A stretch of DNA of 64,000 bases, from NCBI RefSeq assembly GCF_006345805.1, contig NC_043002.1, positions 4,092,001-4,156,000 on the forward strand, given 5' to 3'. Every line of letters begins with the position of its first letter. The first letter of the stretch is position 1. Position numbers and translations under genes: made by a program. This document shows, piece by piece, positions 6,440 to 59,650 of the stretch. This DNA is from Octopus sinensis (Eukaryota). Under the pieces are notes generated by a model. That model saw nothing but the letters and a program-made list of their open reading frames with translations, did not search any database and was not told the DNA's origin.

Positions 6440-6904
6440 TGGTCTAACCCATCCATCTCTTGGTCTAACCCATCCATCTCTTGGTCTAACCCATCCATCT
6501 CTTGGTCTAACCCATCCATCTCTTGGTCTAACCCATCCATCTCTTGGTCTAACTCATCCATCTCTTGGTCTAACCCATCCATCTCTTGGTCTAACCCATC
6601 CATCTCTTGGTCTAACCCATCCATCTCTTGGTCTAACCCATCCATCTCTTGGTCTAACCCATCCATCTCTTGGTCTAACCCATCCATCTCTTAGTCTAAC
6701 CCATCCATCTCTTGGTCTAACCCATCTATCTCTTGGTCTAACCCATCCATCTCTTAGTCTGACCCATCCATCTCTTGGTCTGACTTCATCAATTTCTTGG
6801 TCTAACCCATCCATCTCTTGGTCTAACCCATCCATCTCTTGGTCTGACCCATCCATCTCTTGGTCTAACCCATCCATCTCTTGGTTTGACTTCATCAATT
6901 TCTT
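6440..6904. repeat. 21-bp minisatellite TGGTCTAACCCATCCATCTCT, ~22 copies
   Basis: Direct tandem repetition; variant TGACTTCATCAATTTCTT occurs at 6781 and 6887. Confidence 0.97.
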
Positions 6905-8184: not shown

Positions 8185-10220
8185 TATCAATCACACCATT
8201 AGACTATCAATCTTATCAATCACACCGTTAGACTATCAATCATATCAATCACACCGTTAGACTGTCAATCTTATCAATCACACCATTAGACTATCAATCT
8301 TATCAATCACACCGTTAGACTATCAATCTTATCAATCACACCGTTAGACTATCAATCTTATCAATCACACCATTAGACTGTCAATCTTATCAATCACACC
8401 ATTAGACTATCAATCTTATCAATCACACCGTTAGACTATTAATCTTATCAATCACACCATTAGACTATCAATCTTATCAATCACACCGTTAGACTATCAA
8501 TCTTATCAATCACACCATAGACTGTCAATCTTATCAATCACACCATTAGACTATCAATCTATCAATCACACCGTTAGACTATTAATCTTATCAATCACAC
8601 CATTAGACTATCAATCGTATCAATCACACCGTTAGACTATCAATCTTATCAATCACACCGTTAGACTATCAATCTTATCAATCACACCATTAGACTGTCA
8701 ATCTTATCAATCACACCATTAGACTATCAATCTTATCAATCACACCGTTAGACTATCAATCTTATCAATCACACCATTAGACTATCAATCTTATCAATCA
8801 CACCATTAGACTATCAATCTTATCAATCACACCGTTAGACTATTAATCTTATCAATCACACCATTAGACTATCAATCGTATCAATCACACCGTTAGACTA
8901 TCATCTTATCAATCACACCATTAGACTATCAATTATCAATCACACCATTAGACTATCAATCTTATCAATCACACTGTTAGACTATCAATCTTATCAATCA
9001 CACTGTTAGACTATCAATCTTATCAATCACACGTTAGACTATTAATCTTATCAATCACACATTAGACTATCAATCGTATCAATCACACCGTTAGACTATC
9101 AATCTTATCAATCACACCGTTAGACTATCAATCTTATCAATCACACCATTAGACTGTCAATCTTATCAATCACACCATTAGACTATCAATCTTATCAATC
9201 ACACCGTTAGACTATCAATCTATCAATCACACCATTAGACTATCAATCTTATCAATCACACATTAGACTATCAATCTTATCAATCACACCGTTAGACTAT
9301 TAATCTTATCAATCACACCATTAGACTATCAATCGTATCAATCACACCGTTAGACTATCAATCTTATCAATCACACCATTAGACTATCAATCTTATCAAT
9401 CACACCATTAGACTGTCAATCTTATCAATCACACCATTAGACTATCAATCTTATCAATCACACCGTTAGACTATCAATCTTATCAATCACACCATTAGAC
9501 TATCAATCTTATCAATCACACCATTAGACTATCAATCTTATCAATCACACCGTTAGACTATTAATCTTATCAATCACACCATTAGACTATCAATCGTATC
9601 AATCACACCGTTAGACTATCATCTTATCAATCACACCATTAGACTATCAATTATCAATCACACCATTAGACTATCAATCTTATCAATCACACTGTTAGAC
9701 TATCAATCTTATCAATCACACTGTTAGACTATCAATCTTATCAATCACACGTTAGACTATTAATCTTATCAATCACACATTAGACTATCAATCGTATCAA
9801 TCACACCGTTAGACTATCAATCTTATCAATCACACCGTTAGACTATCAATCTTATCAATCACACCATTAGACTGTCAATCTTATCAATCACACCATTAGA
9901 CTATCAATCTTATCAATCACACCGTTAGACTATCAATCTATCAATCACACCATTAGACTATCAATCTTATCAATCACACATTAGACTATCAATCTTATCA
10001 ATCACACCGTTAGACTATTAATCTTATCAATCACACCATTAGACTATCAATCGTATCAATCACACCGTTAGACTATCAATCTTATCAATCACACCATTAG
10101 ACTATCAATCTTATCAATCACACCATTAGACTATCAATCTTATCAATCACACTGTTAGACTATCAATCTTATCAATCACACTGTTAGACTATCAATCTTA
10201 TCAATCACACCGTTAGACTA
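8185..10220. repeat. 29-bp satellite ATCAATCACACCRTTAGACTATCAATCTT, ~70 copies, with a 718-bp higher-order duplication
   Basis: Head-to-tail tandem units without spacers; diagnostic variants recur at offset 718. Confidence 0.97.
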
Positions 10221-45235: not shown

Positions 45236-46081
45236 CTTTGTTGAAAAAACCCCAAAGAAATCAATGTTCAGTTGATGGGCTGCATATATCCATCATTAAC
45301 ATCCAGTTCCTTATTGGCATGGACGGATGGTTTGATAGGATCCATTGTGTTCAAGGACAGCATCATGTCCCGGTGGTTTGGCAGGATTTCTACAGCTGGA
45401 CGCCTTTCTTAATGCCAACCACTTTACAGCATGGAATGGATGCTCTTTCATGCCATCTGCATTACTGAAGTTACCATGTAGTGCAGAGAATACACCCTGG
45501 GGTGAGTAGGTCAGCATCATGCTAAAGGATAAGGAGATTGATGAGAACTGGAGGAAGGCAGCAGCAGCACAGGATCCAGATGGCTGCACCCAACTAGTAG
45601 AGGAGTGGGGGAGAAAAAGGAAATGAACCGTGGGGACTGCTAGAGATAACAGTGATGTGTTTAGATGGCCCCACAAAGTACAAGGTAAGTTGAATTCATT
45701 TGCAAGATTGGATGGGAAGGAGAATGAGGGGATGCATACTGCTAAAATGGGTAGGGTTGAAGGATGACCAAGTAAGGAGCTGCAGATGTAGAAGAGACTG
45801 AAGGGCAAGAGAGATGGATGACATTATTGAGTAGCTTGCAGATGGTGAAGAGAGGCAGGCCTAATGCATGGGAGAGGTAGGAATCACTGTAATGCAAGTA
45901 GAGAGCACTTCTTTTGCTAATGAGGTCTTCTCAAGAGAACCCAGTCTTTTTGTCATCTTTTCCATCAGGCTCAGGATCCCAAAGTCAGCTTTCGTTACCA
46001 TATTTCTGTTGAGATGCTGTGTTTCTTTCAATTATTTTAAATATAACAAAGAATTCAGTAAAATAACATTATTATTATTAA

Positions 46082-46270
46082 CCCTTTCGTTACTGTATTT
46101 ATTTTGAGATGTTCTGTGTTTCTTTCAATTAATTTAAAATATAACAGAAGAATTTAGTAAAATAACTTACTTGTCATTCAGCTAGTGTTAGGATGAAAGA
46201 TTTTAATTCAAAACTTATGAAAACAAGACATTTGTACTACAGAGCCAGAGCTGGGTTGGTAACAAAAGGG
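46082..46270. mobile_element. piggyBac-type MITE, 189 bp
   Basis: TTAA-CCCTTTCGTTAC ... GTAACAAAAGGG-TTAA (11/12 TIR match, TTAA TSD); left end partially duplicated at 45989-46068. Confidence 0.9.
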
Positions 46271-46329
46271 TTAAGCACTTCCTCTCATCCTCTTTTGCAA
46301 GCTCTAGCCACATTAATGAATTTCTCTAC

Positions 46330-47095: not shown

Positions 47096-49218
47096 AATAT
47101 CTCTGAAAGGAGCAAAAGAAAATCAAATCCTCTGGTTTTATTGAGATCTGAACTCTATACACATTAGGTTCCAAAGACTAAATTAGAACAGTTTAAAAAT
47201 GAATCGAAATAGAAAGGAACCAGAGCAGTAAACCAACGACTTTTTCCATCCTGAAAATGTTTGTAAAACAAGGTTGCAATAAGATGATTCCCCTTCATTT
47301 GTTGCTTGACATACCTGTTCAATTGTTTTGCATTATTTTATGAAACAGGTAAATTTATTTGTCATTTGGTATGTGGATGTGACTTTTCTAATCTAATTTT
47401 GTTATTGACTTGCTGCAGAAACCCCTTTGGCCTCCTATGCGAGCACAAAGAATATTTAAATAACCCAAATCTTTTCACACTGCTGTTAATCCCATAAATT
47501 AAGATGCAATTTGTTCTGATGAAGATAGAAAAAAAAATGACCGAAAAAGTGTCTTGGTCTAAAGATCAATAATGCTATTTTCCCTGCAACAAAGGCATAT
47601 TTTTTAAAATATAATCATCACTACAAAAGACTGACACATCAAACATGCATATAGAATATAAAATATGATTTTTAAATCCTCATGATTATATGATGAACAT
47701 TTATTCAATATTTACAATATATAGTTTAAAAAAAAAATTTTTTAAAAGTAATTTTGTTGGTTTTGAAGAACTTTTATTCATTTCTTCTACAGAGTGTATA
47801 GAATTCTGGTCCAGTAGAAAATTCCTCATGTGTGTCATCACCATGAAGATCTTGTATATTTGGAATTATATCAAGCACTTGAGAATGCCTCAAATAATAG
47901 TTTTAAATGGATGCTCAATACCATCATCTGCTGTCAGTTTTGAACCTGTGGTTTGGGGGAAAAAAGAAGAAAAATGTATAAGATATATACATGAAAAGGA
48001 AACTTCTGTTGGCTCCAGACTTTCATTACATGTTACATTCAGAAGAGGAGCAAATATAATTAGAATACAAGTCATAACTGTGGCAGAAACAGGATGAATA
48101 TTCTATTGAATTCCTTTTTAGAAATATCTATAATGCATTTGGACTGCTAGACTTTTCACTTGTACTTTCAGCCAAGCCATTGACAGTTCACATTTCTTTT
48201 TACTAAACAGTAAAGTAAATTAGACAAAACATGCAACACAAAGCAATAGATCTAAAGAATGTACGGCAATTAAGAGCACATCCATATCATTAGACTATGA
48301 ACTCACTAAAGAGACGGGGATATCACCACAATTACTGCAAAATCAGTATTAAATCTAATGCAAGAGTCAACAAGAATTTATTCAATGCATCAACAACTTT
48401 TGCTCGAGACCCAAACTCTACACTATGAGAAACAAGAAAAAGGATTAGAGATTAATCTTAGGCCAAGTAATGCCAAAATTATTTCAGCTCCAACCCTAGA
48501 CAAAAAAAAAATACAACCCACACTATGCAAGACACTTTCCATCCAATAGCTCAACTTGTACAAAACACTGAACACAATTCAATAACCTTAACAGATTTTG
48601 TAAATTACAACTATTTCTGGATAGCAGACCATTGACAAAGCTAAGAGACTTAGATTCTTCATGTGCTGGGTGAAATAAAATAAAATCTGGACTCAAGTCT
48701 AAGAGCTGACAATTGCAATTATGTACTAAATCAGTTGTACCGTTTCCGCACAAAATTCAGACTGGGGCGGTATCATTGTCATCACTTTAGTACACTACCA
48801 AGATGAAGTATAAAACCTAACAGGGTTTCAAACAATTTTTAACAGAAACACATCTATTGGATTAACCCTTCTTGACACCCCTTGGGACCTCCTCCGGTAT
48901 GGCAACCTCCTTTTCATAAAGTTATCTGAAAAATCTCCCATCACAATTTCATGCTAAGTTTCATTCCTAACACCAGCTCTTTTACTAAATTCTTCCCTAT
49001 TTTAGCAGAAATATGGCAATGAATGGTTTAAAATCAACTCCTTGCCTCGTGCTAGTTTTATTAGGACTCAAGAAAGGTAAAAAGCAGAAACCAATGCCCA
49101 CCCACCACTACTTGACTAAAGAGACCAATAGAATAAATACCAAGCCTTAAAAAAAAAAAGGTACTGGGTTTCAAATCATTAGACTATGAACTCACTAAAC
49201 AGACTGGGATATCACCAC

Positions 49219-50535
49219 TGTAGCAATATCGTTTCCCCCATTGCTATCTTCACTGTATTAAGAATAATCTTGTTCGAGATTACAAACATCTTCAGCTAGT
49301 TTAATGTTTGTTGTAAACACTAATCCGATTGGTTGACACGTGACGCGATTTGTCTCTACTTAGTTCGCACCACTGGTTGACATGTGACACGACTGGTCTC
49401 TGCACGGTTCGCACCGCTGGTTGCCACGTGACGCGATTTGTCTCCACTTATTTCCGCGCCATTGTTCCAAACAGCCAATCACAGCTTTCCATTTCTGAAG
49501 TTCGTTTGAGCCACCTAACCTGTATATAAGAGAGTGTTTCTCAGACACTTTTCGTCTTAGGTTTCTAGTTCTTCTCAGAACTGACCCCTGACCACAGAGT
49601 TCGTCTTTGGCTTCTAGTCCTGGTGGGGACTAAACCTCTGACCACACAGAGCATACTCAAACATGTTCCAGTTCGAAAGGCAGGCGACCAACAAGCAAAA
49701 CTATCTACGAAGATTTAGCTTGTACCTAAGATGGCTACAGATTCAACTCATACGGTTAGTGTGAAAATCTCACCACGGAAAAACAGTTGCAGAATATCTA
49801 TATCAAGAGAAAACCAACCAAGCAGAATATATAATGAAGACGCTGCAAAAACCAAGCAGCAGACACAACGTCATCGCCAACATCGTCTCTATCTACGAAG
49901 ATTTAACCTGTACACAAGATAACTACAGATTCAACTCAAGCGGTTAGGTGAAAATCTCACCACGGGAAAACGGCTACAGTAAATATATCTGAAAGAATGT
50001 TCATATCAAGAGAAAGATAAACACAACAAGTGATTCAACTAATCTCAGCTCCGAGACACAACATCTTGATATTGAACTCTTACACTTCGTGTACCTCATA
50101 AACAGTAAATCAATTACCTGTCTTTAGTTTTAGTTCTTGTAAGAACTGGCTTCAGAGACAGCGCTGCTCAACCAAATGATATACAATTGTTCCTGCTACA
50201 ACTAGTTACGATGCTAAATGTACACTCAACACGAAGAGTCTACTATCTTTGCCGCCTCCACCATCAGGTACTTTTCTATGTCAATCACATTCACCTTTCG
50301 CTCTGTCACACTCAGAAACACACAGACACAAAACCTGCTAACGCTTACAAACTCCCAACATCAACACGATTGTAAGATAAATAAGGTTTATCGCAAAAGA
50401 GAAGACTAGTCGTCAATCCACTTATGTTTTATTGTTACTGCATGTATTGTACGGCATGTAACAACTCATTAAGAATGGGATCGCGTGCGATTGTATTCCC
50501 TATACGATACAACCGCATATGAACCTGTTCTTATA
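49219..50535 (+). mobile_element. Probable solo LTR, 1317 bp
   Basis: Interrupts a repeat unit with CCAC (or ACCAC) duplicated at both ends; starts TGTAG, ends TTATA (not canonical CA); CCAAT and TATATAAG near 49480-49530; internal ~190-bp direct repeat; no ORF. Confidence 0.7.
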
Positions 50536-51110
50536 CCACAATTACTGCCAAATCAGTATTAAATCTAATGCAAGAGTCAACAAGAATTTATTCAATGCAT
50601 CAACAATTTTTGCTGATGACCCAAACTCTACACTATGAGAAACAAGAAAAAGGATTAGAGATTAATCTTAGGCCAAGTAATGCCAAAATTATTTCAGCTC
50701 CAACCCTAGACAAAAAAAAAATACAACCCACACTATGCAAGACACTTTCCATCCAATAGCTCAACTTGTACAAAACACTGAACACAATTCAATAACCTTA
50801 ACAGATTTTGTAAATTAAAACTATTTCTGGATAGCAGACCAATGACAAAGCTAAGAGACTTAGATTCTTCATGTGCTGGGTGAAATAAAATATAATCTGG
50901 ACTCAAGTCTAAGAGCTGACAATTGCAATTATGTACTAAATCAGTTGTACCGTTTCCGCACAAAATTCAGACTGGGGCGGTATCATTGTCATCACTTTAG
51001 TACACTACCAAGATGAAGTATAAAACCTAACAGGGTTTCAAACAATTTTTAACACAAACGCATCTATTGGATGAACCCTTCTTGACACCACTTGGGACCT
51101 CCTCCAGTAT

Positions 51111-51495
51111 ACTCTTACTCCTTTACTTGTTTCAGTTATTTGACTGCGGCCATGCTGGAGCACTGCCTTTAGTCGAGCAAATCGACCCCGGGACTTATTC
51201 TTTGTAAGCCCAGTACTTATTCTATCGGTCTCTTTTGCCGAATCGCTAATTCACGGCGACGGAAACACACCAGCATCGGTTGTCAAGCAATGCTAGAGGG
51301 AAAAAACAGACACACAAACTTATATATATACGATAGGCTTCTTTCAGTTTCTGTCTACCAAATCCACTCACAAGGCATTGGTCGGCCCGGGGCTATAGCA
51401 GAAGACACTTGCCCAAGATGCCACGCAGTGGGACTGAACCCGGAACTATGTGGTTGGTTAGCAAGCTACTTACTACACAGCCACTCCTGCGCCTC
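51111..51495 (-). mobile_element. Family B SINE inserted in array copy 2
   Basis: Full reverse-complement family B body interrupting CCTCCRGTAT|..CAACCTCC. Confidence 0.9.
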
Positions 51496-53019
51496 TGTCA
51501 ACCTCCTTTTCTCAAAAGTTATCTGAAAAATCTCCCATCACAATTTCATGGTAAGTTTCATTCCTAACACCAACTCTTTTACTAAATTCTTCCCTACTTC
51601 AGTAGAAATATGGCAATGAAAGGGTCAAATCAACTCCTTGCCTCCTGCTAGTTTTATTAGGACTCAAGAAAAGTGAAAAGCAGAAATCAATCTTGACAGG
51701 ACTTATCAGATGGGCAGAAACCAATGCCCATGGGCATGGCTGTGTAGTTCAGAGTTCAGTCCCACTGTGTGGCACCATGGGAAAATGTCTTCTAGCCTTG
51801 GGTTGACCAAAGCCTTATGAGTACACTTGGTAGACAGAAACTGAAAGAAGTCCATTGTACCTTTGTTCGTCCACTCACCACCACTTGACAAAAGAGACCA
51901 ATAGAATAAATACCAAGCCTTAAAAAAAAAAAAAGTTCTGGGTTCAAATCATTAGACTATGAACTCACTAAAGAGACTGGGATATCACCACAATTACTGC
52001 AAAATCAGTATTAAATCTAATGCAAGAGTCAACAAGAATTTATTCAATGCATCAACAACTTTTGCTCAAGACCCAAACTCTACACTATGAGAAACAAGAA
52101 AAAGGATTAGAGATTAATCTTAGGCCAAGTAATGCCAAAATTATTTCAGCTCCAACCCTAGACAAAAAAAAAATACAACCCACACTATGCAAGACACTTT
52201 CCATCCAATAGCTCAACTTGTACAAAACACTGAACACAATTCAATAACCGTAACAGATTTTGTAAATTAAAACTATTTCTGGATAGCAGACCAATGACAA
52301 AGCTAAGAGACTTAGATTCTTCATGTGCTGGGTGAAATAAAATAAAATCTGGACTCAAGTCTAAGAGCTGACAATTGCAATTATGTACTAAATCAGTTGT
52401 ACCGTTTCCGCACAAAATTCAGACTGGGGCGGTATCATTGTCATCACTTTAGTACACTACCAAGATGAAGTATAAAACCTAACAGGGTTTCAAACAATTT
52501 TTAACACAAGCACATTTATTGGATTAACCCTTCTTGACACCACTTGGGACCTCCTTCAGTATTGCAACCTCCTTTTCATAAAGTTATCTGAAAAATCTCC
52601 CATCAGTTTCATTCCTAACACCAGCTCTTTTACTAAATTCTCCCCTATTTCAGTAGAAATATGGCAATGAAATGGTTAAATCAACTCCTTGCCTCGTGCT
52701 AGTTTTATTAGGACTCAAGAACGGTGAAAAGCAGAAATCAATGCCCGTGGGCATGGCTGTGTAGTTAGAAGTGTAGTTCAGAGTTCAGTCCCACTGTGTG
52801 GCACCACGGGCAAATGTCTTCTCCAAGCCTTATGAGTAGACTTGGTAGACAGAAACTGAAAGAAGTCCAGTGTGCCTTTGTTCGTCCACTCACCACTACT
52901 TGACTAAAGAGACCAATAGAATAAATACCAAGCCTTAAAAAAAAAAGTACTGGGTTTCAAATCATTAGACTATGAACTCACTAAAGAGACTGGGATATCA
53001 CCACAATTACTGCCAAATC

Positions 53020-54437
53020 TGGCAACGGGTGTCATACCTGCGGACTGAAGAACAGCGATAATGTGCCCAATTTTCAAGAAAGGGAGCCGCGAAGACCCGC
53101 TTAACTACCGACCGGTTTCCCGGACATCAACAATCAGCAAGATGTTCGAAACCATCCTTAAAAAAGGTATGATGCTCCACCTCCAAAACACAGTCTATCT
53201 CTGATTCCCAACACGGCTTCGTGCCGAAGTGATCATGCTTGACCCAACTCACTGGTAATGGAAGAATTGGTGACGCGCATCCTCGATGATAGTGATGCTG
53301 TTGACATCGTTTTATTGGACTTTGCCAAAGCTTTTGACTCGGTAAACCACCACCTATTACTTGTCAAGCTCCAAGCATATAGTTTCCATCCAGATATTGC
53401 ACGATGGGTTGGAGCCTTCCTCCCAGATCGCTCCTTCCAAGTCCAAGTTAATGGTTCCCAGTCCGACGTCTCCAGTGCGAGCCTCAAGGTTCAGTGCTTG
53501 GGCCCTTATTGTTCTTAGTCTTCATAAATGACTTGCCCAACGACCTCACGCAACACACCCTTCTATTTGCCTACGATGTCAAACTGGTCGCTCCTCGCGG
53601 TGATATAGAGGATCTTCGTCGATGCCTCCACCAAATTTGGAGGTGGTCTAACGAATGGGACCTGTGTCTGAATGTGTCAAAGTGCTGTCATCTGCCTGTT
53701 GGCTCTCCTCCTGCAACTCAACTTGATTTCGAGCCGGGTCGTCTGCTGCTGGAGAGGACCAATCAGGTAAAGGACCTGGGTATCTTGGTGGAGTCCTCCT
53801 TTACACCTTCAACCCAGTGCGCTCATGCTGCCAACAAAGCATGCGGAATTCTGTTCTTGATTCGACGGTCAATCGGAATGCTCACAGCAGCCATATTCCT
53901 ACCACTCTATGTCACGCTGGTGAGACCCATATTGGAGTACGGGATTCAAGCCTCTTCTCCTTATCTCCTCAAAGACATAAAGCATCTCGAAAGAGTCCAG
54001 AAGCTGGCTACCCGAATGGCTCTTGGTCTCAAGAATTTGTCTTATGAAGAAAGGCTGAAGACGCTCGACCTTTATTCTCTAGAAAAACGCCGCCGCCGTG
54101 GTGATCTCATTCTTGCTCACATCATAAGCGGAAAGTGTAACCTCTCGAAAGAGCTGTTCTTCACTCCTGCTCCAGAGCTTCGGCTGCGGGGTTATTCCGA
54201 AAAGCTCTATCTGCGACGATTTCATCTCAATCGAAGGAGAGGGGCTTTCTCCGTCCGGGTTGCGGATCCGTGGAATAAGCTGCCAGACAAGATGGTGAAG
54301 ATGCCGACGACCGCTCAGTTCAGTTCAAAGTCTCCCTTGACCTCAAGTGGCCTGAACACTTTACATGAACACCACCCTGTACATAACTCCATGTCCCCCT
54401 ACATGGCTTTGCTTTTTGAGCCAAAAAATTAACTAAC
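53020..54437 (+). mobile_element. 5'-truncated CR1-clade LINE (RT domain, frameshifted, catalytic FADD changed to FAYD)
   Basis: GVIPAD..PIFKKG..NYRPVS; LDFAKAFDSVNH; GPLLFLVFIND; FAYDVK; RPILEYG; RRRRGDLI; LRGYSEKL..FSVRVADPWNKLP; 3' hairpin CCATGT/ACATGG and (ACTA)n tail. Confidence 0.93.
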
Positions 54438-54918
54438 TAATGCAAGAGTCAACAAGAATTTATTCAATGCATCAACAACTTTTGCTCAAGACCCAAACTC
54501 TACACTATGAGAAACAAGAAAAAGGATTAGAGATTAATCTTAGGCCAAGTAATGTCAAAATTATTTCAGCTCCAACCCTAGACAAAAAAAAAATACAACC
54601 CACACTATGCAAGACACTTTCCATCCAATAGCTCAACTTGTACAAAACACTGAACACAATTCAATAACCTTAACAGATTTTATAAATTACAACTATTTCT
54701 GGATAGCAGACCAATGACAAAGCTAAGAGACTTAGATTCTTCATGTGCTGGGTGAAATAAAATATAATCTGGACTCAAGTCTAAGAGCTGACAATTGCAA
54801 TTATGTACTAAATCAGTTGTACCGTTTCCGCACAAAATTCAGACTGGGGCGGTATCATTGTCATCACTTTAGTACACTACTAAGATGCTAAACTGATCAG
54901 AGAGCATTTGTAGTTTAA

Positions 54919-55640
54919 CCCTTTCGTTACCAAACCGCCCAAACCCACCCGTATTTACCTATTCATATTTAAATGAGAATATCAGTGCAAATCTCTTTAG
55001 TACATTCGTGAAAACACGTGATGATACTTCGTAAACACTTCATTTACGGTTTTGTACAACGATCGATGTGTAATTTTAATTCCGTGAATTTTGGGAGATT
55101 TTTTCCGAAATTTGTTCCTTTTGTGTTTTCAAAATTTGTAATTCTGACAAAAAATGGATACGAATTTCATTATATCAAGAAGCGAGTCAGAATTCGAAGG
55201 ATTTTCTACTGAAGACCTTGATAAATCTAACTATGACTAAAAAAAAAAAAAAGCATGTGGTATTTGATAATGAATCTGATGCTTCGTTTTCCATAAGTGA
55301 AAACAGTGAATCCGAGAGCTCCGACAGCGATAAAGAAAATGAATTGGCACCTGAATGGAGTGAAAATTTAAAAACTGTCTCTTTCGGTGATTTTTCTGAA
55401 GAAACTGGACCAAGCCACAGACTTTCCCAGGAGAGTAAAGCCTTAGACCATTTCTTTTTACTTTTTCGAATGTGCCTATTTGAAATCATTACGGCAGAAA
55501 CAAACGGTTACGCTAAACGTAAACAAAGCGAAAGAAACGATAGTTTGTGGTTTCCCACAACCTTAAATGAAATTAAGACTATTTTGCCATAAATATTATT
55601 ATGGGTATCAGAAAGTTACCCAGAATAACAAATTCTATTG
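54919..55640 (+). mobile_element. piggyBac left end with frameshifted transposase N-terminus (3'-truncated)
   Basis: TTAA-CCCTTTCGTTAC (same TIR as the 46082 MITE); MDTNFIISRSESEFEGFS; FSEETGPS..ALDHFFLLF..EIITAETNGYA..WFPTTLNEIK-(fs)-FAINIIMGIRKLP. Confidence 0.92.
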
Positions 55641-57570
55641 TATTTTGTTGTATACCCAATTGAATATTAGCTAATAACCCATTTTCTATAGCAATGTTTG
55701 AACAAAATTTTAATAATTTTATATTTTGTTGAATTTACCTGTATCTACCTGCAATTAGAGTCACTTTGTGACAAAAATTATAGTATAGAATTGGTTGAGA
55801 ACATTTCATTAAATTATCTTCCAAAAATCACATTAATATATTGATAAATAAAAAAGTAATAGTTGTTTAATGAAACAAGACTAAATTTATGATTACATTA
55901 GAAATTAATTGAAACACATAAAATCTGGACTCAAGTCTAAGAGCTGACAATTGCAATTATGTACTAAATCAGTTGTACCGTTTCCGCACAAAATTCAGAC
56001 TGGGGCGGTATCATTGTCATCACCTTAGTACACTACCAAGATGAAGTATAAAACCTAACAGGGTTTCAAACAATTTTTAACAGAAACACATCTATTGGAT
56101 GAACCCTTCTTGACACCACTTGGGACCTCCTCCGGTATGGCAACCTCCTTTTCATAAAGTTATCTGAAAAATCTGCCATCACAATTTCATGGTAAGTTTC
56201 ATTCCTAACACCAGCTCTTTTACTAAATTCTTCCCTACTTCAGTAGAAATATGGCAATGAAAGGGTTAAATCAACTCCTTGCCTCGTGCTAGTTTTATTA
56301 GGACTCAAGAAAGGTGAAAAGCAGAAATCAATCTTGATAGGACTTATCAGAGGGGCAGAAACCAATGCCCGCGGGCATGGCTGTGTAGTTAGAAGTGTAG
56401 TTCAGAGTTCAGTCCCACTTGTATAATACACTTAACAGATTTTGTAAATTACAACTATTTCTGGATAGCAGACCATTGACAAAGCTAAGAGATTTAGATT
56501 CTTCATGTGCTGGGTGAAATAAAATAAAATCTGGACTCAAGTCTAAGAGCTGACAATTGCAATTATGTACTAAATCAGTTGTACCGTTTCCGCACAAAAT
56601 TCAGACTGGGGCGGTATCATTGTCATCACTTTAGTACACTACCAAGATGAAGTATAAAACCTAACAGGGTTTCAAACAATTTTTAACAGAAACACATCTA
56701 TTGGATTAACCCTTCTTGACACCCCTTGGGACCTCCTCCGGTATGGCAACCTCCTTTTCATAAAGTTATCTGAAAAATCTCCCATCACAATTTCATGCTA
56801 AGTTTCATTCCTAACACCAGCTCTTTTACTAAATTCTTCCCTATTTTAGCAGAAATATGGCAATGAATGGTTTAAAATCAACTCCTTGCCTCGTGCTAGT
56901 TTTATTAGGATTCAAGAAAGGTAAAAAGCAGAAACCAATGCCCACCCACCACTACTTGACTAAAGAGACCAATAGAATAAATACCAAGCCTTAAAAAAAA
57001 AAAGGTACTGGGTTTCAAATCATTAGACTATGAACTCACTAAAGAGACGGGGATATCACCACAATTACTGCAAAATCAGTATTAAATCTAATGCAAGAGT
57101 CAACAAGAATTTATTCAATGCATCAACAACTTTTGCTCAAGACCCAAACTCTACACTATGAGAAACAAGAAAAAGGATTAGAGATTAATCTTAGGCCAAG
57201 TAATGCCAAAATTATTTCAGCTCCAACCCTAGACAAAAAAAAAATACAACCCACACTATGCAAGACACTTTCCATTCAATAGCTCAACTTGTACAAAACA
57301 CTGAACACAATTCAATAACCGTAACAGATTTTGTAAATTAAAACTATGTCTGGATAGCAGACCATTGACAAAGCTAAGAGACTTAGATTCTTCATGTGCT
57401 GGGTGAAATAAAATATAATCTGGACTCAAGTCTAAGAGCTGACAATTGCAATTATGTACTAAATCAGTTGTACCGTTTCCGCACAAAATTCAGACTGGGG
57501 CGGTATCATTGTCATCACCTTAGTACACTACCAAGATGCTAAATTTGATTAGAGAACATTTGCAGTTTAA

Positions 57571-58155
57571 CCCCTTAATTTTGGTTCATAATAAAAATCC
57601 GACCGTGAGAACCTGTTGTTATCTAAATGTAAATTTGAACCCAAATCTCGTTGGCACATTCGTTAAAACATGTGATTTCACATCGTAAACAGTTAAGTTA
57701 TAGTATCCGACATTGCTTGAAGTGATATCTCAACTCAGTGAATTTTGGGAGATTTTTTCCACATTCTTTTCGGCATCGATTTTTCTTCAACTTTGAAAAT
57801 GGATAGGAGTTTCATGTTATCAAGCATTGATTCTGAATTTAAAGCTTTTTCAAAGGAAAATAGGGAGATATCGAGAAAAAGAACGAAATAGGTACTAAAG
57901 CACGTTGTGTACAAAATAATGAATGATATTTTTTTATCCGAAAATGAAAGCAGCGCCTTCCGAAGAAACAAAGCGGCGATGGCGACAGCAACATCGGAAT
58001 GAAGTAAAAAAAACTTCAGACATGTTTTTATTAGCAATTTTTCTGGGGAGATAGTTTATCTATAGTTTTTCTTAGGAAGCGAAACCGTTAGACTTTTATT
58101 TTTTTTCAGTATGCTAGTTTGAAGCGATCACTTCGGAAACAAATTTACAGGAAAA
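57571..58155 (+). mobile_element. Second, strongly diverged piggyBac-like left end and transposase N-terminus
   Basis: TTAA-CCC start; shared islands with the 54919 element (CAAATCTC..ACATTCGT.AAAACA.GTGAT; GTGAATTTTGGGAGATTTTTTCC); MDRSFMLSSIDSEFKAFS..HVV..FEAITSETN; stops. Confidence 0.8.
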
Positions 58156-58611
58156 AAGACTACACTATACAAGACACTTTCCATCCAAGTCTAAGAGCTG
58201 ACAATTGCAATTATGTACTAAATCAGTTGTACCGTTTCCGCACAAAATTCAGACTGGGGCGGTATCATTGTCATCACTTTAGTACACTACCAAGATGAAG
58301 TATAAAACCTAACAGGGTTTTTAAAGAGACCAATAGAATAAATACCAAGCCTTAAAGTACTGGGTTCAATACATTCAACTAAAATTCAAAGCAATGTCAC
58401 AGAATGGTTGCACTTCAATGACTGAAACAAGTAAAAGAAGAAAGACAAGCGTTTACTAAAATCACTTAAATCGATTCAGTCACAGAATTCAGACTGGGGC
58501 GAAACCTTATTCATCACAATTAGTCCATTAATTGCCAACTATCCAATATTAGGGTATTTTGAAACCAAAAACTGTCACTACTGTAATATAAAAAGAAATA
58601 GTTTCATACAT

Positions 58612-58975
58612 ACTCTCTTTTACTTGTTTCAGCCATTTGACTGCGGCCATGCTGGAGCACCGCCTTTAGTCGAGCAAATCGACCACGGGATTTATTCTTT
58701 TGTAAGCCCAGTACTTATTCTATCTGACTCTTCTGCCGAACCGCTAAGCTACGGGGACGCAAGCACACGAGCATCGGTTGTCAAGCAATGCTAGGGGGAC
58801 AAACAGACACACTAACACATATATATATATACGACAGGCATCTTTCAGTTTCCGTCTACCAAATCCACTCACAAGGCATTGGTCGGCCTGGGGCTATAGC
58901 AGAAGACACTTGCCCAAGATGCCACGCAATGGGACTGAACCCGGAACCATGTGGTTGGTTAGCAAGCTACTTACC
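58612..58975 (-). mobile_element. Family B SINE
   Basis: Reverse-complement family B body. Confidence 0.88.
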
Positions 58976-59254
58976 ACGTCTAAAATATACAAAGCACTAA
59001 CTCCAAATTGTTCAGAACTGCACATACAAAAGCCATCCTTCCATCTCTAATCTTTCTAAGCTAGTCCAGTTTGCCCTCTTCACCATCTCATCATTTTAGC
59101 CCCTGCAAGTCAAACATGACTACACTCATATAGCCTAAGGGCAGTTTGCCCCATAACTCTCATAAAAATACAAATCTCTTTTATGAAATTTTCCAGTGAA
59201 GAGGATAAGAATTGGGCAGACTTTACTAAATGCATGTTTGCATGAAATTTACCA

Positions 59255-59650
59255 GGCACAGGAGTGGCTGTGTGGTAAGTAGCTTGCAAACCAACCACAT
59301 GGTTCCGGGTTCAGTCCCACTGCATGGCATCTTGGGCAAGTGTCTTCTGCTATAGCCCCAGGCCGACCAATGCCTTGTGAGTGGATTTGGTAGACGGAAA
59401 CTGAAAGAAGCCTGTCGTATATATATGTATGTGTGTGTATGTGTTTGTCCCCCCTAGCATTGCTTGACAACCGATGCTGGTGTGTTTACGTCCCCGTCAC
59501 TTAGTGGTTCGGCAAGATAGACCGATAGAATAAGTACTGAGCTTACAAAAGAATAAGTCCCGGGGTCGATTCGCTCGACTCAAGGCGGTGCTCTAGCATG
59601 GCCGCAGTCAAATGACTGAAACAAGTCAAAGAGCAAAAAGAGAGCAAAGA
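59255..59650 (+). mobile_element. Family B SINE, full length
   Basis: Head, core and tail as at 44006. Confidence 0.9.

What the first reader, a model, noticed from the sequence alone, without database searches (positions are those of the whole stretch)
54880..58155. Two strongly diverged piggyBac-like elements attached at the identical nucleotide of near-identical repeat units
Seen: copies 4 and 7 both leave the unit after AAGATG (54887 and 57538) and enter a ~30-bp linker absent from other units (GCTAAACTGATCAGAGAGCATTTGTAGT versus GCTAAATTTGATTAGAGAACATTTGCAGT, ~85% identical). Both then read TTAA-CCC and a piggyBac left end with ATG 235 or 228 nt downstream. The two elements are only patchily alignable (conserved islands, different TIR, proteins MDTNFIISRSESEFEGFS versus MDRSFMLSSIDSEFKAFS), while upstream units differ by a few percent. 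This identity gradient does not fit one recent duplication. Inference: (a) two piggyBac families independently use the same target, implying specificity beyond TTAA; (b) an old duplication whose repeat part was later homogenised up to a sharp boundary; or (c) mis-assembly.
Basis: partly seen in the sequence, partly recalled or inferred. Interest (0 to 1): 0.75.

Follow-up and report, generated by a model that had tools for sequence, protein, structure and literature searches.

The report
Two piggyBac lineages, one repeat-array site
In a tandem repeat array of an octopus-like genome, broken copies of two different piggyBac transposon lineages sit at the same TTAA of the same short flank, most likely through two separate insertions into old repeat copies whose upstream part was later homogenised; this is a curiosity of repeat evolution, not a new kind of element.

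Summary
Eight unit copies carry ...TACACTACCAAGATG. Two of them (ends 54887 and 57538) continue into a 27/28-nt linker "T", then TTAA, then a piggyBac-like left end; the other six continue AAGTATAAAACC.

The two elements are not decayed copies of one insertion. Copy 7 belongs to a lineage with members elsewhere in Octopus sinensis (80-84% identical in the 5' region) and is only 66% identical to copy 4. Copy 4 belongs to another lineage: dS about 1.6 and dN/dS about 0.2 against the first. Both had the same terminal repeat, CCCTTTCGTTAC; copy 7 lost 33 nt of it.

Seven other ends of these families have unrelated flanks. TTAA is therefore the true element end, T is host flank, and there is no sign of family-wide specificity beyond TTAA.

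Divergence steps at AAGATG: 2% upstream against 15-18% in T (p 0.004-0.0007). T's divergence matches copy 7's own decay (10.8%). The units show recombination among themselves.

Best reading (about 0.45): old paralogous unit copies were each hit at the homologous TTAA by a different lineage, and their upstream part was later overwritten by gene conversion up to the point where homology with the majority units ends.

Mis-assembly and the origin of T could not be tested. Interest is low to moderate.

The parts
48283..58356 (+). Irregular head-to-tail array of a roughly 0.9-1.07 kb unit. It holds 8 copies of the unit's 'A' end, several of them truncated. It is interrupted by a 1.3-kb insertion (49219-50534), a young SINE (51111-51495) and a LINE fragment (53020-54436).
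   Evidence: Self-BLAST, motif scan, sequence reading.
54437..54887 (+). Copy 4, 'A' part of the unit, ending ...CTACTAAGATG.
   Evidence: 98-99% identical to the other units; no variant shared only with copy 7.
54888..54914 (+). Linker T4 (27 nt). Host-type flank found only here and in copy 7.
   Evidence: No significant similarity to piggyBac-like interiors, to the unit or to the MITEs.
54915..54918 (+). TTAA target site at the left end of the copy-4 element.
   Evidence: TTAA also borders the left ends of L001, L005 and L006 and both ends of the MITE at 46078-46274.
54919..55917 (+). Lineage-A piggyBac-like element, internally deleted and 3'-truncated. TIR at 54919-54931 (CCCTTTCGTTACC). 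ATG at 55154. About 160 codons carry a single frameshift, inside an A14 run (55239-55252). Internal deletion at about 55634-55641. The 3' subterminal region (55642-55917) is fused by microhomology to unit position -130.
   Evidence: HMMER hits to piggyBac transposases.
57016..57538 (+). Copy 7, 'A' part of the unit, ending ...CTACCAAGATG. It is continuous with copy 6, and the 56425-57062 block is 99.06% identical to copy 1.
57539..57566 (+). Linker T7 (28 nt), paralog of T4 (4 transitions and 1 indel).
   Evidence: (permutation p<0.001 for T4 against T7).
57567..57570 (+). TTAA target site at the left end of the copy-7 element.
57571..58159 (+). Lineage-B piggyBac-like element, an old dead 5' fragment. 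TIR remnant CCCCTT followed by a 33-nt deletion. ATG at 57799. Several stops and frameshifting indels. 10.8% private substitutions. Truncated at about codon 115 and fused to unit sequence at an A-rich microhomology.
58322..58530 (+). Old diverged paralog of the unit (66% and 75% identical to unit positions 20-178 and 516-589). Its homology stops about 8 nt before the end of A.
46078..46274 (+). Complete 197-bp piggyBac-type MITE with TTAA on both sides and the same TIR (CCCTTTCGTTACT ... GGTAACAAAAGGG). Its flanks are unrelated to T.
56100..56269 (+). Related piggyBac-type MITE inside every regular unit, 56 nt after AAGATG (copy 5 shown; in copy 6 at 56706-56875).
   Evidence: and sequence reading.

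Best explanation
The linker T is ordinary flanking DNA that belonged to an older version of the repeat unit (A-T-TTAA-...). At least two paralogous copies of that version existed. A lineage-B piggyBac-like element inserted long ago at the TTAA of one copy (copy 7). A lineage-A element, internally deleted now or at insertion, inserted later at the homologous TTAA of the other copy (copy 4).

The array continued to recombine. The A part of both old copies was overwritten by gene conversion or unequal exchange with the now-dominant A-X units. Those donors lack T and the elements, so every conversion tract must stop where homology ends, exactly after AAGATG. This gives the sharp step from about 2% to about 17% and then 34% divergence. 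Both elements were later truncated at their 3' sides by separate microhomology-mediated deletions.

Shown: there are two lineages; TTAA is the true element end; the flank is not shared by other family members; the divergence step is real; the units recombine. Inferred: the order of events, the existence of old A-T units, and that using the same TTAA twice was coincidence or a local hotspot.
For: (1) Two lineages. In the 5' region copy 7 is 84.0, 82.4 and 79.5% identical to L001, L005 and L006, and 66.3% identical to copy 4. It is 77% identical to L001 over 600 bp. Copy 4 against L001 and L005 gives dS of about 1.6 and dN/dS of 0.19-0.21; its nearest relative is L002, with dS 0.65.

(2) Different ages. 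Copy 7 has 10.8% private substitutions plus private deletions of 33, 11, 6, 2 and 2 nt. Copy 4 keeps about 160 codons with one frameshift in a homopolymer.

(3) T is flank, not element. Lineage-B left ends at three other loci start at TTAA with unrelated upstream sequence, as do four MITE ends. T matches nothing inside the elements, the unit or the MITE.

(4) The step. A has 9 differences in 450 nt; T has 4 substitutions and 1 indel in 28 nt (Fisher p=0.004 and 0.0007). T's divergence is compatible with copy 7's private decay rate (p=0.33).

(5) Recombination among units. Five of 6 pairs of informative sites fail the four-gamete test, and copies 4 and 7 share variants with different regular units.

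(6) Long history of the region. A 66-75% paralog of the unit lies at the array's edge.

(7) The coincidence is mild. There are 7 TTAA per 889-bp unit and at least 5 independent piggyBac-type insertions in this 64-kb window. Insect piggyBac is documented to re-hit the same TTAA (PMC3078864).
Against: No empty A-T-TTAA site and no third copy of T were found, so the postulated old A-T unit is inferred only from the two filled copies. T shows no detectable homology to what follows A in regular units or in the old paralog, so it is unknown which junction is ancestral. Two independent hits on the same TTAA still need a chance of roughly 1 in 8, or a hotspot. The age of copy 4's insertion relative to the T4/T7 split cannot be measured. 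Only the window and a handful of external loci could be examined, and the source genome could not be searched.
Confidence: 0.45

Rival explanations
1. Reuse directed by a resident element. One element first occupied the T-TTAA site. Transposase bound to its shared 13-bp TIR then tethered an incoming element of the other lineage, which landed in the bordering TTAA (tandem insertion) or replaced the resident. Duplication, precise excision or deletion afterwards left one lineage per copy.
For: Both lineages share the TIR CCCTTTCGTTAC, so cross-recognition is plausible. Both elements have the same orientation at the same TTAA. For P elements, donors land in tandem with, or precisely replace, a resident element: 32 tandem insertions and 2 replacements among 34 (PMC3887531).
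Against: No remnant of a second element lies downstream of either copy. The 3' part of copy 4 keeps the same relative distance to lineage B as its 5' part (17% against 9% within B in the 3' part; 33% against 21% in the 5' part), so it is not a chimera. I know of no report of this behaviour for piggyBac. The scenario needs more steps than two independent hits.
Confidence: 0.15
2. One reading: T is a preferred target. It would be part of a dispersed sequence or a structural hotspot that both lineages recognise beyond TTAA.
For: Two lineages sit at the same TTAA of paralogous flanks. piggyBac hotspots that depend on about 100 nt of context are reported (PMC3078864). Post hoc, a YAGAR pentamer lies within 32 nt upstream of 5 of 7 other ends, against a 12.8% background. 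The L001 flank and the flank of the unit's own MITE share CAGAAACACAT (p about 0.001 before correction for 36 tests).
Against: The flanks of L001, L005, L006 and four MITE ends show no significant similarity to T (p 0.07-1.0). No other T-like sequence occurs in the 64 kb or in the fetched loci. The sample is small, and the motifs were chosen after looking at the data.
Confidence: 0.12
3. Recurrent rearrangement. The region is a patchwork made by template switching or end joining, and A was joined to pre-existing T-element modules. AAGATG would be a recurrent breakpoint or the end of a discrete sequence module.
For: Copies 5, 6 and 8 are truncated at different points, and both 3' junctions of the elements are microhomology joins. 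Three different sequences follow the end of A: X, T, and the sequence after the old paralog, whose homology stops within about 8 nt of AAGATG.
Against: Two independent joins at the identical nucleotide on both partners are very unlikely without homology. Homologous exchange inside A explains the same facts more simply.
Confidence: 0.1
4. One reading: an assembly artefact wrongly joins repeat units to element-bearing sequence from elsewhere.
For: The region is made of 98-99% identical repeats, and no independent assembly of it could be found.
Against: The window contains no Ns. The two modules differ in T and in element lineage, so they are not a duplicated or collapsed single locus. At 17% divergence the two T copies cannot be alleles. 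An assembler cannot invent the same junction with two different continuations.
Confidence: 0.08
5. One reading: one insertion was duplicated with the unit, and the two copies then decayed neutrally in place.
For: Same site, same orientation, and a homologous flank.
Against: The lineages differ by dS of about 1.6 with dN/dS of about 0.2. Copy 7 shares derived characters with copies at other loci. Copy 4 keeps a nearly open reading frame. Conservation is patchy (p=0.002), and the islands are the ones conserved across all lineages.
Confidence: 0.03

Closest known systems
piggyBac superfamily DNA transposons (Pfam DDE_Tnp_1_7; annotated in Octopus sinensis as 'piggyBac transposable element-derived protein 5-like')
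   Same: TTAA at the element border. Terminal repeat starting CCC. An N-terminal acidic region followed by the start of the DDE_Tnp_1_7 domain. A close relative (L005) encodes a 481-aa ORF matching the whole domain (E=4.6e-76). MITE derivatives carry TTAA on both sides.
   Different: Both copies here are dead 5' fragments without right ends. They represent two lineages that are 66% identical in the 5' region.
piggyBac insertion hotspots in experimental systems (Meir et al. 2011, PMC3078864)
   Same: Independent insertions repeatedly use one particular TTAA and ignore neighbouring ones.
   Different: There it is one engineered insect element in human cells. Here it is two natural lineages at paralogous sites, n=1, with no demonstrated context requirement.
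Concerted evolution of tandem repeats by gene conversion or unequal crossing-over (established knowledge)
   Same: Near-identity among the units, mosaic sharing of variants, and an identity step exactly where homology with the donor units ends.
   Different: The converted tract abuts transposon-bearing relics, so the boundary looks like an 'attachment point'.
P-element targeted transposition and replacement (PMC3887531 and the references in it)
   Same: A second element ends up at exactly the site of a resident element of the same family.
   Different: It is a different superfamily and repair mechanism. It is not documented for piggyBac, and no tandem remnant is seen here.

Membership tests
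piggyBac superfamily transposon | TTAA target-site duplication flanking both ends | tested here: inconclusive
   Copies 4 and 7 have TTAA at the left border only, because both right ends are missing. The related MITE at 46078-46274 has TTAA on both sides. L001, L005 and L006 have TTAA at their left ends.
piggyBac superfamily transposon | Terminal inverted repeat beginning 5'-CCC directly after TTAA | tested here: met
   Copy 4 has CCCTTTCGTTACC, matching L005 and MITE1 at 12 of 13 positions, and the MITE's right end is its inverted complement. Copy 7 retains CCCCTT followed by a private 33-nt deletion.
piggyBac superfamily transposon | Encodes a DDE_Tnp_1_7 transposase | tested here: inconclusive
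   The fragments alone give no Pfam hit because only the first 35-60 domain residues remain. Copy 4's 119-aa ORF finds 220 proteins at E<=0.001, including full-length piggyBac transposases. The lineage-B relative L005 matches PF13843 over positions 2-349 of 349 at E=4.6e-76, and P0151 is pre-annotated as PF13843.
piggyBac superfamily transposon | Catalytic DDD triad and C-terminal cysteine-rich domain | not tested
   These regions are absent from both window copies. They were not examined residue by residue in L005.
Site-specific (sequence-targeting) transposon | Most family members share the same flanking target sequence beyond the duplicated site | tested here: not met
   Seven other ends (L001, L005, L006, MITE1 left and right, unit MITE left and right) show no significant similarity to T. 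The sample is small.
Single insertion duplicated with its host repeat | The copies diverge neutrally, uniformly and about equally from their common ancestor | tested here: not met
   dN/dS is about 0.2 at dS of about 1.6. Private divergence of copy 7 is 10.8% while copy 4 keeps a near-intact ORF. Conservation is non-uniform (p=0.002).

The most novel reading that the evidence does not exclude
piggyBac-like elements of this cephalopod might preferentially integrate at a TTAA that already borders a resident piggyBac end, or at a specific roughly 20-30-nt context. That would be natural 'homing', in which different lineages come to occupy the same site. The second flank resemblance (L001 against the unit's MITE) and the YAGAR motif would then be traces of the same preference.
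Probability: 0.1. Interest if true: 0.55.

Novelty: new member of a known kind. Interest (0 to 1): 0.3.

Why it matters
If the best reading holds, the locus is a clear small example of how concerted evolution in a tandem array can create a sharp identity boundary that mimics site-specific attachment. It also shows that apparently diverged copies of one insertion can be different transposon lineages. That is useful as a caution for repeat annotation and TE dating in cephalopod genomes. Only if genome-wide flanks showed real targeting or homing by piggyBac-like elements would it bear on transposase target choice, which matters for piggyBac-based genome engineering.

Tried and rejected
(1) T as part of the element (an outer end). 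Rejected: L001, L005 and L006 start at TTAA with unrelated flanks.

(2) T as a copy of piggyBac-internal sequence around the internal TTTAAA, or of a MITE. No significant alignment.

(3) T as a diverged homolog of the first 36 nt of X (which would make regular units 'empty sites'), or of the sequence after the old A paralog. Anchored alignments are not significant, p 0.09-0.5.

(4) T as a hAT-like terminus (CAGAGAAC...). No further copies or inverted partner exist in the window. The 10 nt before it are also shared by T4 and T7, so it does not mark an element boundary.

(5) Copy 4 as a chimera of a lineage-A 5' part and a lineage-B 3' part. Rejected: the AT-rich tail is the 3' subterminal/UTR region of the element (L005), and it is proportionally as distant from lineage B as the 5' part.

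(6) External census of the array. Protein-index searches with copy 4's conceptual protein and with a 76-aa ORF from A found nothing. Exact look-ups of junction-spanning or nearby ORFs found nothing. A metagenome scan for T found nothing. A phage-collection search gave no match, as expected for this kind of sequence.

(7) More left ends through other HMMER hits (P0002, P0037, and the sequences fetched). They are other families or 5'-truncated contigs.
Full report
**Context**

The window is AT-rich eukaryotic DNA (62% A+T, no Ns), full of microsatellites and tRNA-derived SINEs. The nearest external matches to the elements studied here lie on Octopus sinensis chromosomes (GCA_006345805.1). The source is therefore an octopus or a close relative. 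The species was not determined.

**Check of the observation**

From 48283 to about 58356 there is an irregular head-to-tail array of a 0.9-1.07 kb unit.
- The motif TAGTACACTAC[CT]AAGATG occurs eight times.
- Six copies continue AAGTATAAAACCTAACAGGG ("X").
- Copies 4 and 7 continue with a 27- or 28-nt linker "T" (54888-54914 and 57539-57566), then TTAA, then CCC....
- The two T copies differ by four transitions and one indel. No further T-like sequence exists in the window.
- The 450 nt upstream are 98.0% identical between copies 4 and 7, and 98-99% identical among all copies. No variant is shared by copies 4 and 7 alone.
- The elements align at 66-68%.

**What the two elements are**

Copy 4's 119-aa ORF (55233-55589) finds 220 proteins at E<=0.001 in an exhaustive HMMER search. 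These include full-length piggyBac transposases and short Octopus proteins beginning MDRSF/MERSF. I fetched the DNA for four of them.
- L001 and L005 are two O. sinensis chromosomal loci.
- L006 and L002 are Logan contigs.
- L005 is a nearly full-length element. Its 481-aa ORF matches Pfam DDE_Tnp_1_7 end to end at E=4.6e-76.

Lineage assignment (TTAA through the first 20 codons):
- Copy 7 is 84.0, 82.4 and 79.5% identical to L001, L005 and L006. It is 66.3% identical to copy 4.
- Over 600 bp copy 7 is 77% identical to L001.
- Copy 4 is about equally far (65-69%) from all of these. It is closest to L002, at 72% over 679 bp.
- Over the first 140 or so codons, copy 4 against L001 and L005 gives dS of about 1.6, dN of about 0.31 and dN/dS of about 0.2. 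Against L002 it gives dS 0.65.

The two window copies therefore belong to two lineages, here called A (copy 4) and B (copy 7), which separated long ago while under selection as working transposases. They cannot be two decayed descendants of one insertion. The longest identical run is improbable under uniform decay (p=0.002).

State of each copy:
- *Copy 7* is an old wreck. It has 10.8% private substitutions, against 1.6-7.7% for its relatives. It has a private 33-nt deletion that removed most of the TIR region, further deletions of 11, 6, 2 and 2 nt, and several stops. It stops at about codon 115, where it is fused to unit sequence at an A-rich microhomology (58159/58160).
- *Copy 4* has an intact TIR, CCCTTTCGTTACC, matching L005 and a nearby MITE at 12 of 13 positions.
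  - About 160 codons are interrupted only by a frameshift inside an A14 run.
  - There is an internal deletion after ...KLPRITN, at about 55634-55641.
  - It then has about 275 nt that match the 3' UTR and subterminal region of L005 at 83%.
  - It lacks the right end and joins unit position -130 by microhomology (55917/55918).

Both lineages use the same terminal repeat.

**Is the linker part of the elements or a specific target?**

Lineage-B left ends at three other loci begin at TTAA and are preceded by unrelated sequence. The same holds for both ends of a complete 197-bp piggyBac-type MITE at 46078-46274 (TTAA on both sides). It also holds for both ends of a related MITE that sits inside every regular unit, 56 nt after AAGATG.

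Results of the permutation tests:
- Among the nine flanks, only two pairs are significant: T4 with T7 (p<0.001), and L001 with the unit-MITE left flank (p about 0.001, sharing the 11-mer CAGAAACACAT). The second is borderline after 36 tests.
- T is not similar to any interior part of the elements, to the unit, or to the MITE.
- T is not similar to the start of X or to the sequence following an old paralog of A.

So TTAA is the true end, and T is flanking DNA present in two paralogous copies. With a small sample, there is no evidence that these families recognise anything beyond TTAA.

**The identity step**

- A has 9 differences in 450 nt. T has 4 substitutions plus 1 indel in 28 nt (Fisher p=0.004, or 0.0007 counting the indel).
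- T is marginally less diverged than the elements (p=0.05).
- T's divergence is what copy 7's own private decay rate predicts (p=0.33).

T7 therefore looks as old as the copy-7 element, while the adjoining A is young.

The units recombine with each other. Of four informative sites, five of the six site pairs fail the four-gamete test, and copies 4 and 7 share variants with different regular copies. The block 56425-57062 (copy 6 into the start of copy 7) is 99.06% identical to copy 1 and includes the same SINE deletion. This shows recent copying that runs up to T7.

At the right edge of the array lies a 66-75% paralog of the unit (58322-58530). The region has therefore been duplicating for a long time.

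**Best explanation (confidence about 0.45)**

An older form of the unit carried A-T-TTAA. Two paralogous copies were hit at the homologous TTAA, first by a lineage-B element (copy 7) and later by a lineage-A element (copy 4). Ongoing gene conversion or unequal exchange with the majority A-X units then refreshed A in both. Each tract ended necessarily where homology ends, after AAGATG. Later microhomology-mediated deletions truncated both elements.

The double hit needs only a modest coincidence. There are 7 TTAA per 889-bp unit and at least five independent piggyBac-type insertions in these 64 kb. Reuse of one TTAA by independent insertions is documented for insect piggyBac (PMC3078864).

The weak points are these. 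No empty A-T-TTAA site and no third T were found. The ancestral state of the A junction is undetermined. The source genome could not be searched.

**Rival explanations**

- *Resident-element-directed reuse* (tandem landing or replacement, as in P-element targeted transposition; PMC3887531). It is plausible because the TIR is shared, but it leaves no remnant here. Confidence 0.15.
It is not supported by the other flanks. It cannot be excluded, given the small sample, a second flank resemblance, and a post hoc YAGAR motif present upstream of 5 of 7 other ends against a 12.8% background. Confidence 0.12.
- *Recurrent rearrangement at the end of A.* Confidence 0.10.
- *Mis-assembly.* It is untestable here, but unlikely to generate one junction with two different old continuations. 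Confidence 0.08.
It is contradicted by the lineage evidence. Confidence 0.03.

**Comparison with what is known, and verdict**

Both elements are ordinary, dead members of the piggyBac superfamily. Their lineages are already represented in O. sinensis annotation as "PGBD5-like" or uncharacterised proteins. The array behaviour is classical concerted evolution. What remains slightly unusual is one TTAA used by two lineages next to a flank of unknown origin. I rate interest at 0.3. Genome-wide flank tabulation and long-read validation are the decisive tests.

Noticed in passing
window 46078-46274 (and 45985-46077): Complete 197-bp piggyBac-type MITE with TTAA on both sides and the TIR CCCTTTCGTTAC(T). 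Directly upstream lies a partial, diverged second copy of its left half, which suggests a tandem or partial duplication.
   Followed up: partly
window 56044-56103 (unit X flank) against L001:2710-2740: The 25 nt upstream of the TTAA of the unit's internal MITE (ACAGAAACACATCTATTGGA|TTAA) resemble the flank of an O. sinensis lineage-B element at an unrelated locus (GCAGAAACACATGTAGCATTGA|TTAA). They share an 11-mer, with permutation p about 0.001 before correction for 36 comparisons. This is a second case of different piggyBac-type elements with similar left flanks, and it is unexplained.
   Followed up: partly
flanks of L001, L005, L006; window 46275-46306; 56081; 54898; 57550: A YAGAR pentamer (CAGAG, TAGAG or CAGAA) lies 17-32 nt upstream of the TTAA at 5 of 7 other piggyBac-type ends and in both T copies. 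The background at random TTAA sites in the window is 12.8%. The motif was chosen post hoc and the sample is small.
   Followed up: partly
window 58322-58530: Old diverged paralog (66-75%) of the array unit, directly after the last array copy. It lacks unit positions 179-515, and its homology ends about 8 nt before the AAGATG boundary.
   Followed up: partly
window 53020-54436: Non-LTR retrotransposon fragment (the 3' part of an RT ORF of 312 aa, with a weak RVT_1 match at E=4e-5). It is inserted between copies 3 and 4 of the array and replaces 11 nt of the unit.
   Followed up: partly
window 49219-50534: A 1.3-kb insertion splits the copy 1 / copy 2 boundary of the array. It contains a 44-bp tandem repeat (49330-49454). 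Its identity was not determined.
   Followed up: no
window 51111-51495, 58617-58985, 59240-59650: Young copies of a roughly 380-400-bp tRNA-derived SINE in both orientations, one of them inserted into the MITE of unit copy 2. An older copy of the same SINE forms part of every array unit, and is partly deleted in copies 1 and 6.
   Followed up: no
L005:1741-4160 (O. sinensis CM016871.1): Nearly full-length lineage-B piggyBac-like element with a 481-aa ORF covering the whole DDE_Tnp_1_7 domain. The cysteine-rich C-terminus lies in another frame after a stop. A SINE is inserted in its 3' subterminal region, and the right end was not located.
   Followed up: partly
window 8185-10220 and 6440-6885: Two long minisatellites: a 29-bp unit with about 71 copies at 93% match, and a 21-bp unit with about 21 copies at 95% match.
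   Followed up: no
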